Shown here one piece after another: positions 5,539-9,422 of a stretch of 64,000 nucleotides of DNA. Below the pieces are notes generated by a model. That model worked only from the letters and a program-made list of their open reading frames with translations, was not told the DNA's origin and made no database searches. A program made the translations under genes and the position numbers. Position 1 is the stretch's first letter, and each line of letters begins with the position of its first letter. The DNA lies in the sequence record LC680885.1; one strand, given 5' to 3'.

Positions 5539-6252
5539 TTAACCGAAATATAATTTCTTTCTGTTACTATTAAATATAGAATAATTTTCCATCTTTTCTA
5601 CTAACTCTCTACGTTTATCTCTTGCTTCACGTAAATCATCCATATTAAGATTTAATTCTCCAAAAGTAGTTTGTAAGCTCTGGAATCTACTTCTCATAGC
5701 ATATAATGATATTTGAACATCATAAGAAGCTAATTCTAAGAAATAGTCATGCATATTATTTGGTACAGAACCAAAATGTTTATCATGATAAGTATTCAGA
5801 ACGATTAGTAAATTAACAGAACCAATTACAGCAGAACTTAATATTTCTATTTTATTAGGATGGTGATATCTAAAAGTAGATGGTGATAAATTAATTGCCA
5901 TTAAGTCAGACATCATTTGACTATCTATAGGATTTCCCATAGCGAATCCTGCATAAGGACTCATATTACCTGCATAACCTGTTAAATTAGTAATAGGATT
6001 ATTAGCACCAATTACTCTATTAATATTAACTATAGGATTCTCAGAATCTATATAGAACATATTTGTAGTTCCTTCTACTTTATCTTCCGGTTTTATAATT
6101 ACTCTTTCTTGTTTAGGATGAAATTTACTAAATGTAGGAATAGTGAATCTTTCTACTGTTTTAATAATTTCATCAGGTTTTAATTCTAAATCAGTGAACA
6201 TGAAACCTACGTCACGTTCAATATAGTTAAGTATTTCTGTATTGGTTAACAT
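5539..6252 (-). CDS. Neck/head-completion protein (T4 gp13-like)
   Basis: 237 aa; N-terminal ILNYIERDVG...ELKPDEI and C-terminal GELNLNMDDLREARDKRRELVEKM pattern; downstream of the prohead protease. Confidence 0.5.
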   Translation of the reverse strand: MLTNTEILNYIERDVGFMFTDLELKPDEIIKTVERFTIPTFSKFHPKQERVIIKPEDKVEGTTNMFYIDSENPIVNINRVIGANNPITNLTGYAGNMSPYAGFAMGNPIDSQMMSDLMAINLSPSTFRYHHPNKIEILSSAVIGSVNLLIVLNTYHDKHFGSVPNNMHDYFLELASYDVQISLYAMRSRFQSLQTTFGELNLNMDDLREARDKRRELVEKMENYSIFNSNRKKLYFG

Positions 6253-6276
6253 AACCTTTAATCACATCCATACATA

Positions 6277-8290
6277 TTATTTAAAGTTTCTATAGAAATC
6301 ATCAAGTCCATTAAGAACAGATTCTTCTAAGAAAACTTTGATAGTTTTATTACTTTCTCTAATTGAAGCTAATTGAGAACCTTTATCATAACTGATATTA
6401 GATTCATCAACTCCAGCAAATCCCATATCTTCTGCAATGTATTTCACATTATCTGAATTTTCTTTAATATAAGTTAAAACTTCTCTAGGAGAGAATTCAG
6501 TAATTTTACCATTAGCAAACATATCAATTGATTCATTTACCATTTGTAAATCATTAGGATTATAGTTATTATGACCTTCTGAAATAATATTTTGAATATA
6601 AGAATCTTGATGAGATGGAATTACTACCCAATCATAACAAATTAATCTTAAAGGCTTAGTAACTTCAACTTCACCAGAAGGTGTTCTATTAATTTTACTG
6701 AAACCACGCATTGAGAAAGATACGTCAGATTTTTGTCCAATTAATCCTTTCATATCTTTACCAGCTGCAGTTTGAGCTGTTTCTACTTCTCCCATTAATT
6801 TATTACCATTCCACCAAGTTCTAGTAACAATATGAGAAATATTGCGTTGATCAATATACATTTGACGTTTAGGTTCATCACTTAAGGGATGTCCTGATTC
6901 CATTATCTTCATATAAGTTCGTTAGACTTATACCGTCTTAAAAAGACTGCTCTATAATTTCTATAGAAGATGAGACCATATCAAAATCCTTTATAAGAAC
7001 AAAGGACCTCTCAAATTTCGATTTCACTTGAAATCTACTCCCTATAGGGATGGTCGTTGAACTATCCAATTAAAGTTAAATCTTTCTTTCTACAATTACA
7101 AATTTTTGTATTATGGAAGTCACACATATTGTATCTTTCATATTTTATGTCATTGAAGTTTCTTGTAGGTTTATAACAAATACAAAATTTGTATTGATTT
7201 TCTTTAGGTATTAAATAGAAATAGGGTCTAAGTAAATCTAAAAAATCTAGTATATCGTCAAATTTTTTCATACCAATATCTTTTATTTTTCCTTTTTCTC
7301 TCATGACTTTAAAATTTAAATTAAATTTTTCATTAACTTCTTTAACGAATTTTTCAATATCTTCATCTCTATATGAAGCTAAAGTTATTTTTAATCTTCT
7401 ACTTAAAGTTGGTTTTCTATTATTTGGTCTCTTTTGATAACCCACTGAAAGTGAGCCATCATCGATATACCAGTATAATAGAACTAAAGGATCAATAAAA
7501 TTTATTTCTGGTAATTTTCTAGAATTATCTTCATATCTTGATATTTCAATCATATTACGAATTAATTCTTTCTCTTTTGAGCTTATACTAAATCTTAAAG
7601 TATTAAAATGACCTTTTCTTATCTTATTAGTTTTGTAATGCTCACTAATAATATTGTATTTTCTATTTATATATTCTACTTCTTTTATGGACTCTTGAGT
7701 AAATCCTAGAGATGGATTAATATTATTTCCTCTCGGAGTTTCTATATGTCCATCACCAAGTAGACTTCCTAAAATAATAGAATTAACTTTTTCTTTTTCC
7801 ATATTAATCATTCCCTTAATTTTATAATTATTTGTTAAGGGTGTCCTAATTAATAGGTAAAAGAGGATAGCTGCTGATTATCCATTATTAACAGTACTTA
7901 GGACCTTATATTATTAAATGTATAAAAATAATAAAAGGCTTTTATTTCACCATATACCATCTTAACTATTGTTTCTACTTTTCAGTAACCATTAAGGTTA
8001 GTTAAGCTTTAGGAGTTCCCAGCAATTAAAGAGATTTCGACACTATATTACTATAGTGAAGGGCAAATTCTACCATAAAAAGTTCTTCTTGCTAATTTTT
8101 CTTGTATTACTGGACTATCTAAACCACTTTGAATAACATCTTTACGATAAACACGACCATTACGGTTTTGTCTATCCGCTTCTTGTAACTCAGCAATGAA
8201 TCTAACCGATTTATTATTATCTTGAACCACTTCTGGTTGAGAAGTTGTATTAGATTCATTAATAAGATAAGCTTTTATATCTTTAGACAT
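6277..8290 (-). CDS. Prohead core protease (T4 gp21-like), spliced: exon 1 8290-8072, exon 2 6900-6277, 280 aa
   Basis: Exon 1 LQEADRQNRNGRVY...TFYG joins in frame to ESGHP...SHIV...GEVE...FSMRG...YDWVVIPSH, restoring the gp21 GExxHP and SxRG catalytic motifs. Confidence 0.9.
7062..7811 (-). CDS. Intron-encoded LAGLIDADG homing endonuclease (likely start at ATG 7802)
   Basis: Two motifs IILGSLLGDGHI and LLYWYIDDGSL; lies in the P6 loop and its stop abuts the P7 strand; AAGGGA RBS fits ATG 7802. Confidence 0.88.
   Translation of the reverse strand: MINMEKEKVNSIILGSLLGDGHIETPRGNNINPSLGFTQESIKEVEYINRKYNIISEHYKTNKIRKGHFNTLRFSISSKEKELIRNMIEISRYEDNSRKLPEINFIDPLVLLYWYIDDGSLSVGYQKRPNNRKPTLSRRLKITLASYRDEDIEKFVKEVNEKFNLNFKVMREKGKIKDIGMKKFDDILDFLDLLRPYFYLIPKENQYKFCICYKPTRNFNDIKYERYNMCDFHNTKICNCRKKDLTLIG
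7825..7836 (-). promoter_or_regulatory. Intron-internal late promoter for the endonuclease, inside an RBS-sequestering hairpin (7813-7841)
   Basis: AACAaataatTA lies between arms CCCTTAA and TTAAGGG; the 3' arm contains the RBS. Confidence 0.65.
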
Positions 8291-8324
8291 TTATTTAACT
8301 TCCTTTCACATATTAAATTTAGAA

Positions 8325-8336
8325 TATTTAAATGTT
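8325..8336 (-). promoter_or_regulatory. Putative late promoter for the protease operon
   Basis: AACAtttaaaTA on the minus strand, 35 nt upstream of the protease start. Confidence 0.6.
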
Positions 8337-8350
8337 TGATAAGCAATTTT

Positions 8351-8362
8351 AACAATAGAATA
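8351..8362 (+). promoter_or_regulatory. Putative late promoter for the head operon
   Basis: AACAatagaaTA 28 nt upstream of ORF 8391. Confidence 0.6.
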
Positions 8363-8390
8363 TTAACCTTAATGAAAATATGAATAGGAT

Positions 8391-9422
8391 GTGAAATACT
8401 TGAAGAATTTCAATGAAGTAGAAAGTGAATTAAAATATTTCATAGAACAAACAGATAACGATTCTTTTCCTGTTGATTTATATGATAAATTAATTGATAT
8501 TGAAAAGTATGCAGATGTAGATTCTTTTACAAGTGATCAAGTTAGGAAATCGGTTAAATATCTTGTTGCTTTAAAAGATTCACTAGAAAGATTTGAAATT
8601 GAAAATGAACAGTCTGAAATGGCAGTTAATATGGTTCTTCATAAAATAGAATTTTTAAAAGATAAGTATAATACTCTTTATATTAATAAACGTGTTCCAA
8701 ATAATGGTTACATAGATAATTTATATAAAGAAGATTTCAGTTCTAATATTAATACAGAATTTAATTTTAAACAATTAACTGTAGCATTAGCTGAAAGCCC
8801 TGCTGATTCTAAACTAGAAAGAAAAGCTGTTATTAATTTCTTAATGGAAGGTAATATGAATTATCTTAATGAAGCTTATGACAATGAAGCTTATGACGAT
8901 GATGATGAAGATTATCTTGATGGTCTTGATAGTAGTTTTGAAACTTCTAAAGAACCTAAAGTTGCTGAAAAGAATTTAAATAGATTAATTGGTTCTGTTA
9001 AAAAAGCAACCGCTTCTTCTAAAAATATGAATGATAAACAATTAGCTAAAGCTAATCGCATTAGATTTGTAAGAGCTTTATTAACTGGAATTTTATTCTG
9101 TATCGGTTTAAAAATTAGTTCAGCAGCTATTGGTAAAGCTAAAACAGCTTTAATAGGGTTATTGACTGTAATTGTTTATAATGCAAGTAAAGGTAATGAA
9201 CTTAATAGACTTATCATTGTATTAGAAGAAAGAATCCAAACTTTAGAGAATAGAATTGATTCGACTGATGATGGAGAAAAGAGAAAAGAATTAAGAATAT
9301 TAAAATCAGATTTAGAAGGTCAACTTAAGAAAGCTAATTTCCAAAAGAAATCTATTGAGAAAACTAAAAATGCGATTTCTCGTGGAGATGTAAACGATAG
9401 TGGGTCAGCGTATGACTATTAA
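8391..9422 (+). CDS. Putative internal head/ejection protein
   Basis: 343 aa; acidic propeptide-like N-half with LNE-A sites, two hydrophobic helices, C-terminal coiled coil; head cluster. Confidence 0.4.
   Translation: MKYLKNFNEVESELKYFIEQTDNDSFPVDLYDKLIDIEKYADVDSFTSDQVRKSVKYLVALKDSLERFEIENEQSEMAVNMVLHKIEFLKDKYNTLYINKRVPNNGYIDNLYKEDFSSNINTEFNFKQLTVALAESPADSKLERKAVINFLMEGNMNYLNEAYDNEAYDDDDEDYLDGLDSSFETSKEPKVAEKNLNRLIGSVKKATASSKNMNDKQLAKANRIRFVRALLTGILFCIGLKISSAAIGKAKTALIGLLTVIVYNASKGNELNRLIIVLEERIQTLENRIDSTDDGEKRKELRILKSDLEGQLKKANFQKKSIEKTKNAISRGDVNDSGSAYDY

What the first reader, a model, noticed from the sequence alone, without database searches (positions are those of the whole stretch)
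7800..7841. td/I-TevI-style switch: endonuclease RBS locked in a hairpin and freed by an internal late promoter
Seen (minus strand): CCCTTAA-caaataattataaaa-TTAAGGG-aatgattaat-ATG. The RBS is in the 3' arm of a 7-bp stem, and AACAaataatTA starts transcription inside the loop, so such transcripts lack the 5' arm. Knowledge: the T4 td intron controls I-TevI with the same logic. Inference: translation from the pre-mRNA is blocked, protecting splicing and limiting nuclease toxicity. This also independently supports the AACA-N6-TA promoter.
Basis: partly seen in the sequence, partly recalled or inferred. Interest (0 to 1): 0.65.

Follow-up and report, generated by a model that had tools for sequence, protein, structure and literature searches.

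The report
Hairpin-gated intron endonuclease in phage S6
A selfish DNA-cutting enzyme gene inside a self-splicing intron of a giant Staphylococcus phage has its ribosome landing site folded away on the long host-gene RNA and carries its own late promoter that starts RNA inside the fold; this is the trick phage T4 uses, rebuilt here with a different polymerase and conserved in relatives.

Summary
The window is Staphylococcus jumbo phage S6, bases 1-64000. On the minus strand, CCCTTAA (7841-7835) pairs with TTAAGGG (7819-7813, the Shine-Dalgarno). AACA-N6-TA (7836-7825) lies between the arms, and the ATG is at 7802.

It sits in the P6 loop of a 1171-nt group I intron (8071-6901) that splits the prohead protease gene. 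It precedes a LAGLIDADG_2 endonuclease gene.

An outer helix also buries the AUG: -13 kcal/mol, against about 0 for RNA started at 7825.

Genome-wide, AACA-N6-TAT behaves as a real promoter. There are 45 copies where about 180 are expected, and 34 of them are intergenic. The site here scores above the median promoter.

AR9 intron endonucleases g146 and g147 have mapped late starts with the same kind of motif and leader length.

Nine distinct relatives (32-74% identity) keep the same order of arm, promoter and SD arm. Each 5' segment pairs best with its own leader (4 of 20000 permutations).

No transcript start has been mapped in S6. The host gene is itself late, so the gate sorts transcripts rather than times.

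It is a new member of the T4 td/I-TevI kind of control. A copy of the homing site overlaps the promoter and may be an operator.

The parts
8325..8336 (-). Predicted late promoter of the host (prohead protease) gene: AACA-N6-TA followed by T, predicted start 8325, 35-nt leader
   Evidence: A back-to-back partner promoter for the divergent gene lies at 8351-8362 (+).
8072..8290 (-). Exon 1 of the prohead core scaffold/protease gene (73 codons, ends ...TATGGT)
   Evidence: Alignment with the uninterrupted PALS_2 gene and with MarsHill.
6901..8071 (-). Group I intron, 1171 nt. U at the last exon-1 base, G at the last intron base.
   Evidence: boundaries against the intron-less allele. (RF00028 positions 126-253 on 7072-6950, E 0.0064). 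(ORF-less introns in the same gene of Madawaska are RF00028 hits).
7865..7870 (-). P6 5' strand CTATCC; closes the loop that holds the ORF cassette
   Evidence: an ORF-less variant replaces 7066-7866 with a 12-nt loop.
7835..7851 (-). Copy of the exon-2 side of the homing site (AATTAGGACA-CCCTTAA). It overlaps the inner 5' arm and the first two bases of AACA. Candidate operator.
   Evidence: 2 of 40000 random genome 40-mers align as well. The GG.CATCC block is kept in all relatives.
7847..7857 (-). Outer helix, 5' strand (CCUAUUAAUUA)
7835..7841 (-). Inner hairpin, 5' arm CCCTTAA; absent from RNA started at 7825
7825..7836 (-). Predicted internal late (nvRNAP-type) promoter AACAAATAATTA; predicted start A7825, T at +2, 23-nt leader
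   Evidence: The same 12-mer occurs in five mapped AR9 late promoters.
7813..7819 (-). Inner hairpin, 3' arm TTAAGGG, which contains the Shine-Dalgarno AAGGG
7799..7810 (-). Outer helix, 3' strand; includes the start codon ATG 7802-7800
7062..7802 (-). LAGLIDADG_2 homing endonuclease ORF (246 aa). Its last two codons and the stop (GGATAG, 7067-7062) form the P6 3' strand.
6950..7072 (-). Ribozyme core 3' part (J6/7-P7, P8, P7', P9)
6277..6900 (-). Exon 2 of the protease gene. It starts GAATCAGGACATCCCTTAAG; 6899-6882 is the sequence copied upstream of the endonuclease gene.
   Evidence: (Peptidase_S77, weak).

Best explanation
The prohead protease gene of phage S6 is split by a mobile group I intron. 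The P6 loop of that intron carries a LAGLIDADG endonuclease gene with a 64-nt control region.

On any RNA that reads in from upstream, meaning the pre-mRNA started at 8325 and also the excised intron, the control region folds into a two-part helix. The helix buries the Shine-Dalgarno, the AUG and the first codons, so ribosomes do not load. The ribozyme core can then fold undisturbed, including P6, whose 3' strand is the end of the ORF.

The phage's non-virion RNA polymerase also starts at A7825, from an AACA-N6-TAT promoter placed between the two arms. These short RNAs lack both 5' strands. They have an open 23-nt leader and are the only templates for the endonuclease.

Shown here: the anatomy, the predicted folds, the promoter statistics, and conservation with co-variation.
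Shown in AR9 but inferred for S6: that such intron promoters fire late.
Inferred: that translation is blocked, and that this protects splicing or limits nuclease dose.

The host gene uses the same promoter class. The device therefore separates two kinds of RNA made at the same time. Only in the Bacillus phage BpSp homologue, which sits in an nvRNAP beta gene whose AR9 orthologue is already expressed at 5 min, would it act as a timer as in T4.
For: Anatomy.

Folds: the 72-nt read-through context is -13.0 kcal/mol, against -0.4 for RNA started at 7825. Unpaired probability of -17..+3 is 0.17 against 0.55-0.67. The structure is kept in a 302-nt fold. The region ranks 2 of 273 genes for pairedness and 3 of 32 promoter-led genes for unmasking.

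Promoter: AACA-N6-TA occurs 184 times genome-wide, against 268-348 at other spacings. 43 copies are intergenic. AACA-N6-TAT occurs 45 times, 34 of them intergenic, and 32 lie 15-130 nt before a start. The PWM score is 13.6 bits, above all 131 in-gene hits. The gp226 homologue keeps V206/I207. S6 DNA carries uracil.

AR9: late starts are mapped 25 and 24 nt before the intron endonucleases g146 and g147, inside late gene g145. At 40 min their RNA exceeds that of the host gene.

Family: 8 of 10 distinct cassettes have AACA-N6-T[AG], giving 21-32-nt leaders. One has N7 and one has AACT. Ten of 11 are more paired in the long form. Mean self duplex is -9.55 kcal/mol against -6.89 for cross pairings, matched by 4 of 20000 permutations. 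BpSp gp156 (32% identical, different gene, different intron loop) has TTACACC / promoter / GGTGTAA, with 0 of 200 shuffles as paired.
Against: No 5' end, splice junction or protein data exist for S6. The public RNA runs held only contigs of relatives.

The minimal hairpin alone is no better than 15% of shuffles.

The SD (AAGGG, 10-nt spacing) is weak, so expression may be low in any case.

In most relatives the per-sequence shuffle control is not significant taken alone. L024 shows no unmasking.

AR9 g146 and g147 have the promoter but little differential folding, so the hairpin is not a general rule in these phages.

The conserved 5' block (GG.CATCC) may be kept for a DNA-level reason.

Host gene and endonuclease share one promoter class, so there is no temporal separation in S6.
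Confidence: 0.7

Rival explanations
1. The internal promoter is real, but the helix has no regulatory role. It is only a peripheral stem of the P6 extension, or a by-product of AT-rich sequence. The endonuclease is translated, or not, regardless of it.
For: The minimal hairpin has z -1.09. Several relatives are individually non-significant against shuffled upstream sequence. AR9 g146 and g147 work without clear unmasking.
Against: The region ranks 2 of 273 genes for start-site pairing. Self pairing beats cross pairing with 4 of 20000 permutations as good. The same design occurs in BpSp with unrelated arm sequences and in a different intron loop.
Confidence: 0.15
2. The conserved block upstream of the promoter (AGGACA-CCCTTAA; GG.CATCC in relatives) is mainly a DNA operator. 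The endonuclease binds this copy of its own target half-site and shuts off its promoter, as I-TevI does. On this reading the RNA pairing with the SD is secondary. This is compatible with the main explanation as an added layer.
For: 17 of 19 matches to exon-2 positions +2..+19, with 2 of 40000 random 40-mers as good. The GG lies outside the stem yet is kept in 9 of 10 cassettes. The element abuts and overlaps AACA. S6 and MarsHill differ at the same base in both copies.
Against: CATCC is also what an anti-SD arm needs to be. The third base of the block does not follow the local exon in L023, L024, L026 or L028. S6 has a 1-nt deletion in the copy. There are no binding data. No LAGLIDADG autorepressor was found in the literature.
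Confidence: 0.25
3. The internal promoter mainly serves downstream genes. It would restore expression of the gene after the protease (5539-6252) that the 1.2-kb insertion might weaken, as with promoters embedded in T4 seg/mob genes. Endonuclease expression would be incidental.
For: Transcripts from 7825 must run through exon 2 into the next gene.
Against: The promoter keeps a fixed 21-32-nt distance to the endonuclease start and a fixed place between the arms in all relatives. In AR9 the RNA of g146 and g147 rises above that of the host gene.
Confidence: 0.1
4. Both features are chance: an AT-rich motif and a short palindrome with no function.
For: AT-rich genome (25% GC). Only one close relative, MarsHill, carries the identical element, with no informative change in the stems.
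Against: The motif is four-fold depleted and is positioned like the other promoters. At the observed genome frequency, the chance of a correctly oriented copy in the ~20-nt slot is about 0.002. The design is conserved across 51-74% identical relatives and in BpSp.
Confidence: 0.03

Closest known systems
T4 td intron / I-TevI (also I-TevII in nrdD, I-TevIII in nrdB, segB, and Aeh1 mobE)
   Same: An endonuclease ORF lies in a loop of a group I intron (P6 region), and its 3' end reaches into the core. A stable RNA structure hides the SD on read-through RNA. A late promoter just upstream starts RNA that cannot form the structure. A homing-site-like sequence overlaps that promoter (PMC2988022).
   Different: The enzyme is LAGLIDADG, not GIY-YIG or HNH. 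The promoter is AACA-N6-TA(T), read by a phage multisubunit nvRNAP on uracil DNA, not TATAAATA read by modified host RNAP. The S6 host gene is itself late, so the gate is not temporal. Nothing has been tested experimentally.
AR9 g146 and g147 (endonucleases in introns of the late vRNAP beta' gene g145)
   Same: Same phage group and same promoter class. Primary late 5' ends are mapped 25 and 24 nt before the start codons. The g146 promoter is the identical 12-mer AACAAATAATTA.
   Different: Different endonuclease families (Hef-like, VSR-type). The predicted start sites are little changed between long and short RNA. The published paper does not discuss them as intron genes.
AR9 g190 (HNH endonuclease with its own early promoter inside an intron of late gene g189)
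   Same: An intron-borne endonuclease gene with a private promoter, uncoupled from its host gene.
   Different: Early (vRNAP) promoter, so it is expressed before the host gene. No hairpin logic has been described.
I-SceI (closest solved structure)
   Same: A single-chain, two-motif LAGLIDADG enzyme of similar length. phmmer E 2.5e-6 over the second domain.
   Different: A yeast mitochondrial rRNA intron enzyme. Similarity is low, and no regulatory parallel is known to me.

Membership tests
T4-type endonuclease control (SD-sequestering structure relieved by an internal late promoter) | Endonuclease ORF embedded in a longer transcription unit or intron | tested here: met
   ORF 7802-7062 lies inside intron 8071-6901 of the protease gene.
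T4-type endonuclease control (SD-sequestering structure relieved by an internal late promoter) | An RNA structure that pairs SD and AUG forms only on RNA that starts upstream | tested here: met
   Prediction only: -13.0 against -0.4 kcal/mol; unpaired probability 0.17 against 0.55-0.67; rank 2 of 273 genes; co-variation with 4 of 20000 permutations as good.
T4-type endonuclease control (SD-sequestering structure relieved by an internal late promoter) | Transcription start lies between the 5' arm and the SD | tested here: inconclusive
   A promoter motif of full quality is in the loop and AR9 offers precedents. No 5' end has been mapped in S6.
T4-type endonuclease control (SD-sequestering structure relieved by an internal late promoter) | Endonuclease is translated from the short RNA but not the long RNA | not testable with these tools
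   Needs toeprinting, reporter assays or ribosome profiling.
T4-type endonuclease control (SD-sequestering structure relieved by an internal late promoter) | Host gene is early or middle and the endonuclease is late (temporal switch) | tested here: not met
   The S6 host gene has its own AACA-N6-TAT at 8336-8324, as do relatives. The feature is probably met in BpSp, whose host gene is the orthologue of AR9 g089, already expressed at 5 min.
AR9-type nvRNAP late promoter | AACA-N6-T-A/G with the last base as the start | tested here: met
   7836-7825. Consensus from PMC5312081.
AR9-type nvRNAP late promoter | The motif acts as a signal in this genome: enriched before genes, purged elsewhere | tested here: met
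AR9-type nvRNAP late promoter | The genome encodes the specificity subunit (gp226) with its uracil pocket, and the DNA contains uracil | tested here: met
   S6 130989-132287 is 30% identical, E 4e-40, with V206/I207 kept. Uracil DNA is from the literature only.
Group I intron | Precise insertion relative to an intron-less allele; U before the 5' splice site; G as the last intron base | tested here: met
   Exon 1 plus exon 2 gives 280 codons in frame, equal to PALS_2.
Group I intron | Conserved core scored by Rfam RF00028 | tested here: inconclusive
   The whole intron and the 5' half gave no hit. The 3' part gave 18.9 bits, E 0.0064, below the gathering score of 50. Sister ORF-less introns gave 43.9 and 35.1 bits. 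I did not search an ORF-deleted joined model.
Group I intron | Self-splicing | not testable with these tools
   The contigs in the RNA runs came from intron-less relatives, not from spliced S6 RNA.
LAGLIDADG_2 homing endonuclease (PF03161) | Pfam match above the cut-off, and two LAGLIDADG motifs with acidic residues | tested here: met
   70.6 bits against a cut-off of 25. Motifs LLGDG and YIDDG are visible.
LAGLIDADG_2 homing endonuclease (PF03161) | Cleaves the intron-less allele | not testable with these tools
   Presence and absence among S6-like phages fits mobility.
I-TevI-type autorepression operator | A sequence resembling the homing site overlaps the endonuclease's own promoter | tested here: met
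   7851-7835 against 6899-6882, with 2 of 40000 random 40-mers as good. The block is kept in relatives.
I-TevI-type autorepression operator | The endonuclease binds the site without cutting it and lowers promoter output | not testable with these tools
   No data.

The most novel reading that the evidence does not exclude
The control region may be a three-layer device that arose independently of T4. The layers would be a private nvRNAP promoter, an RNA lock on the start site, and an operator. The operator would be the copy of the exon-2 half of the homing site (7851-7835), which overlaps the -11 element of the promoter. An I-SceI-like LAGLIDADG enzyme would bind it and repress its own transcription. 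If so, this would be, as far as I could find, the first LAGLIDADG homing endonuclease to act as a transcriptional autorepressor, and the first regulator described for a jumbo-phage nvRNAP promoter.
Probability: 0.25. Interest if true: 0.7.

Novelty: new member of a known kind. Interest (0 to 1): 0.5.

Why it matters
It shows that the T4 solution to hosting a nuclease gene inside a ribozyme has been reached again. That solution keeps ribosomes off the pre-mRNA and gives the nuclease its own promoter inside the lock. Here it appears in a very different phage lineage, with a different polymerase, promoter grammar and enzyme family. This argues that the conflict between translation and intron folding is general.

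It also gives the first genome-wide sequence evidence that Staphylococcus jumbo phages use the AR9 late promoter, refined to AACA-N6-TAT. An earlier de novo search did not find that motif.

It supplies about ten natural variants for testing. It points to a possible protein regulator of nvRNAP promoters.

It also corrects the S6 annotation, which lists exon 1, the endonuclease and exon 2 as three hypothetical proteins.

Tried and rejected
- Rfam over the whole window, over the intron and over its 5' half found nothing. Only the 3' part gave a weak RF00028 match. I did not search a joined, ORF-deleted or spliced model. Comparisons with the exons were made exon by exon.
- No whole genome was held for the window. 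I rebuilt S6 from six annotated stretches.
- Public RNA runs were contigs only. X2 and X3 carry an intron-less relative, not spliced S6 RNA. X1 carries relatives of the intron. None gives 5'-end information.
- IMG/VR held no relative of the endonuclease.
- RNAalifold on a MAFFT alignment of ten control regions failed, because the arms shift register between sequences. I replaced it with the self-versus-cross duplex test.
- The apparent co-variation between operator-like site and exon in S6 and MarsHill (base +9) does not hold in L023, L024, L026 or L028. I no longer count it as evidence.
- In BpSp the region upstream of the endonuclease does not resemble exon C. Instead a 12-nt exact repeat of the 3' arm lies at the end of the preceding intron. 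This is unexplained.
- AR9 g146 and g147 show no clear hairpin unmasking.
- I tried to draw P1 and P10 by eye and found only short pairings (GGU/GCC, GAAU/AUUU). I make no claim on them.
Full report
IDENTITY AND CONTEXT. The window is bases 1-64000 of Staphylococcus phage S6 (LC680885.1, 100% identity). S6 is an AR9/PBS1-like jumbo phage. Its DNA is reported to carry uracil instead of thymine, and it grows at 30 C.

The finding lies on the minus strand inside an insertion that splits the prohead core scaffold/protease gene. I aligned S6 with MarsHill (same insertion, 95% identical) and with PALS_2 (uninterrupted gene). This fixes exon 1 at 8290-8072, the insertion at 8071-6901 (1171 nt) and exon 2 at 6900-6277. 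The last exon base is U and the last inserted base is G. Exon 1 plus exon 2 read through in frame to 280 codons, as in PALS_2.

The 3' part (7072-6950) matches the group I intron model RF00028 from J6/7 to P9 (E 0.0064, below the gathering score). The whole insertion and its 5' half gave no match. The 800-nt ORF in a loop is the expected reason for the whole insertion.

Madawaska, PB50 and LY01 carry small ORF-less group I introns 4 nt downstream and at other places in the same gene (43.9 and 35.1 bits). They share the core words with the S6 intron.

A metatranscriptome contig (X1) holds the same intron with positions 7066-7866 replaced by a 12-nt loop. The ORF and its 64-nt leader are therefore a cassette in the P6 loop, closed by CTATCC (7870-7865) and GGATAG (7067-7062). 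GGATAG is the last two codons plus the stop codon of the ORF.

The ORF (7802-7062, 246 aa) is a LAGLIDADG_2 endonuclease (PF03161, 70.6 bits). It has two motifs, and its closest solved relative is I-SceI.

THE OBSERVATION. Taken alone, the 7-bp hairpin is not exceptional: -6.4 kcal/mol, with 30 of 200 shuffles as good.

With 20 more bases upstream the fold becomes a two-part helix. CCUAUUAAUUA (7857-7847) pairs with 7810-7799, which includes the AUG. Energies are:
- -13.0 kcal/mol for 72 nt (8 of 200 shuffles as good);
- -15.6 kcal/mol at 30 C;
- -18.4 kcal/mol in a longer context.

RNA begun at 7825 has -0.4 kcal/mol. The helix is kept in the MFE and centroid of a 302-nt fold of the intron 5' half.

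Across all 273 S6 genes, this start region (-17..+3) is the second most paired: 0.17 unpaired against a median of 0.54.

IS AACA-N6-TA A PROMOTER IN THIS PHAGE? In AR9, 94 mapped late starts carry AACA-N6-T-A/G, with the last base as the start (PMC5312081). The MarsHill authors could not recover the motif de novo in the Staphylococcus phages.

I rebuilt the S6 genome and counted.
- AACA-N6-TA occurs 184 times, against 268-348 for spacings N2-N10. Of these, 43 are intergenic (23%, where 7.4% of the genome is intergenic).
- The 33 well-placed sites have T at +2 in 30 cases. The 131 in-gene sites have it in 10.
- The sharpened motif AACA-N6-TAT occurs 45 times, where composition predicts about 180 and other spacings give 51-126. 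Of the 45, 34 are intergenic and 32 lie 15-130 nt before a start.
- In the window, the count is 13 against 31.4 +/- 5.9 expected.

The site at 7836-7824 scores 13.6 bits on a matrix built without it. That is above the median of the good sites (12.1) and above every in-gene hit (maximum 13.0). Its 23-nt leader is within the observed 22-118 nt range.

S6 also encodes a homologue of the AR9 specificity subunit gp226, with the uracil-pocket residues V206/I207 kept.

EXPERIMENTAL PRECEDENT IN AR9. Table S3 of the AR9 transcriptome lists primary late starts for g146 and g147. Both are endonuclease genes inside introns of the late gene g145 (vRNAP beta'). Their leaders are 25 and 24 nt. The g146 promoter is the same 12 letters as the S6 site. 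At 40 min their RNA (722 and 469) exceeds that of g145 (298). The paper's text does not mention them as intron genes. Their start regions, however, fold much the same in long and short RNA.

COMPARATIVE TEST. The only other phage-collection homologue is BpSp gp156 (32% identical). It sits in a group I intron of the nvRNAP beta gene, which is the orthologue of AR9 g089, already expressed at 5 min. Its arrangement is:
- 5' arm TTACACC, then a loop holding AACA-N6-TA;
- 3' arm GGTGTAA, holding the SD, then ATG;
- predicted leader 24 nt;
- -10.9 kcal/mol against 0 for the short RNA;
- 0 of 200 upstream shuffles as paired.

There the cassette lies in L5 and the ORF reads through P5', P4' and P6.

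A protein search found eleven homologues at 51-93% identity: MarsHill's own endonuclease and ten on metagenome contigs. DNA could be fetched for eight of the ten, one of them on two identical contigs. All lie in the same place in protease genes.

Every one shows the same order of elements: a block GG.CATCC, then AACA-N6-T[AG], then an SD complementary to the block. Of the ten distinct cassettes, eight have the exact motif, L020 has N7 and L027 has AACT. Leaders are 21-32 nt.

Ten of eleven are more paired in the long form than in the short form. Column-wise co-variation could not be scored, because the arms shift register. Instead I paired the 18 nt that end two bases into AACA with each leader. 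Own partners give -9.55 kcal/mol on average, against -6.89 for foreign partners. Only 4 of 20000 permutations do as well.

The host gene in three of these relatives carries AACA-N6-TAT 31 nt before its start.

MECHANISM. First, the lock is larger and also covers the AUG. Second, in S6 and its protease-intron relatives the host gene is late as well (promoter at 8336-8325). The device therefore separates two RNA species rather than two times.

Read-through RNA, and also the excised intron, keep the lock. Only RNA started at 7825 is open. The ORF's last codons form P6, so ribosomes on pre-mRNA would unfold the core. This is the rationale shown experimentally for td. In BpSp the same design would give a true early-to-late switch.

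Promoter activity in S6, the translation block and its benefit are all inferred.

A SECOND LAYER? Positions 7851-7835 (AATTAGGACA-CCCTTAA) repeat exon-2 positions +2..+19 (6899-6882) with one mismatch and one missing base. Only 2 of 40000 random genome 40-mers align as well under composition-aware scoring. With plain scoring the figure is 150 of 20000. The copy overlaps the inner 5' arm and the first bases of AACA.

The core GG.CATCC (the Gly-His-Pro codons of the target) is kept in all relatives, including the GG that lies outside the stems. This is the arrangement of the I-TevI operator.

Three points count against it. CATCC is also what an anti-SD arm requires. The third base does not follow the local exon in four relatives. 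And I found no report of a LAGLIDADG autorepressor. I rate an operator function at about one in four.

KNOWN OR NEW. [quoted passage not shown] I found no description of it in jumbo phages. It is a new member of that kind, reached with another polymerase, promoter and enzyme family.

Noticed in passing
window 7835-7851 (-) and 6882-6899 (-): The region just upstream of the endonuclease promoter copies the first 19 bases of exon 2, the downstream half of the homing site. Only 2 of 40000 random 40-mers align as well. The core GG.CATCC is kept in all relatives. It may be an operator, or a relic.
   Followed up: partly
whole S6 genome (L007-L012); window sites 139, 8325, 8362, 10147, 10201, 21630, 22679, 42639, 50473: The S6 late promoter appears to be AACA-N6-TAT. 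There are 45 copies where about 180 are expected, and 34 are intergenic. The T at +2 is in 30 of 33 upstream sites. N7 spacing also looks partly used (51 copies, 13 intergenic). This has not been reported for the Staphylococcus jumbo phages.
   Followed up: yes
window 8324-8363: Two predicted late promoters lie back to back (8336-8324 on the minus strand, 8351-8363 on the plus strand). They drive the protease gene and the divergent gene at 8400.
   Followed up: no
S6 184658-184688 (L010 34658-34688, +): S6_1660, a staphylococcal-nuclease homologue (PF00565), also has a predicted late start inside a hairpin that pairs its start region (unpaired 0.29 in long RNA, 0.69 in short RNA). This is a second nuclease with the same design. 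The tail-tube-like gene at 141686 looks similar.
   Followed up: partly
L004 (Madawaska), L005 (PB50), L006 (LY01), aligned to window 6260-8330: The protease gene is an intron hot spot. These phages carry small ORF-less group I introns 4 nt downstream of the S6 site and at one or two further sites. PB50 and LY01 annotate the exon pieces as separate genes, one of them as 'terminase large subunit'.
   Followed up: partly
window 7066-7866, run X1: A metatranscriptome contig carries the same intron without the ORF cassette; a 12-nt loop closes P6. ORF-containing and ORF-less forms therefore coexist in nature.
   Followed up: partly
window 8072, run X8: A contig identical to exon 1 continues after 8072 with 10 letters unlike either the S6 intron or exon 2. 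It may be yet another insertion at the same site.
   Followed up: no
L013 1313-1326 and 1303-1314 / 1443-1454: In BpSp the nvRNAP beta gene has three introns within about 90 coding bases, leaving a 14-nt mini-exon. A 12-nt exact repeat of the endonuclease 3' arm and start (AGGTGTAATTAT) lies at the end of the preceding intron, matched by 7 of 20000 random draws. It could compete for the 5' arm.
   Followed up: partly
window 6277-6903, 7062-7802, 8051-8290: The S6 record annotates exon 1, the endonuclease and exon 2 as three hypothetical proteins. The 'start' ATG of S6_0070 (6903-6901) is in fact the last three bases of the intron.
   Followed up: yes
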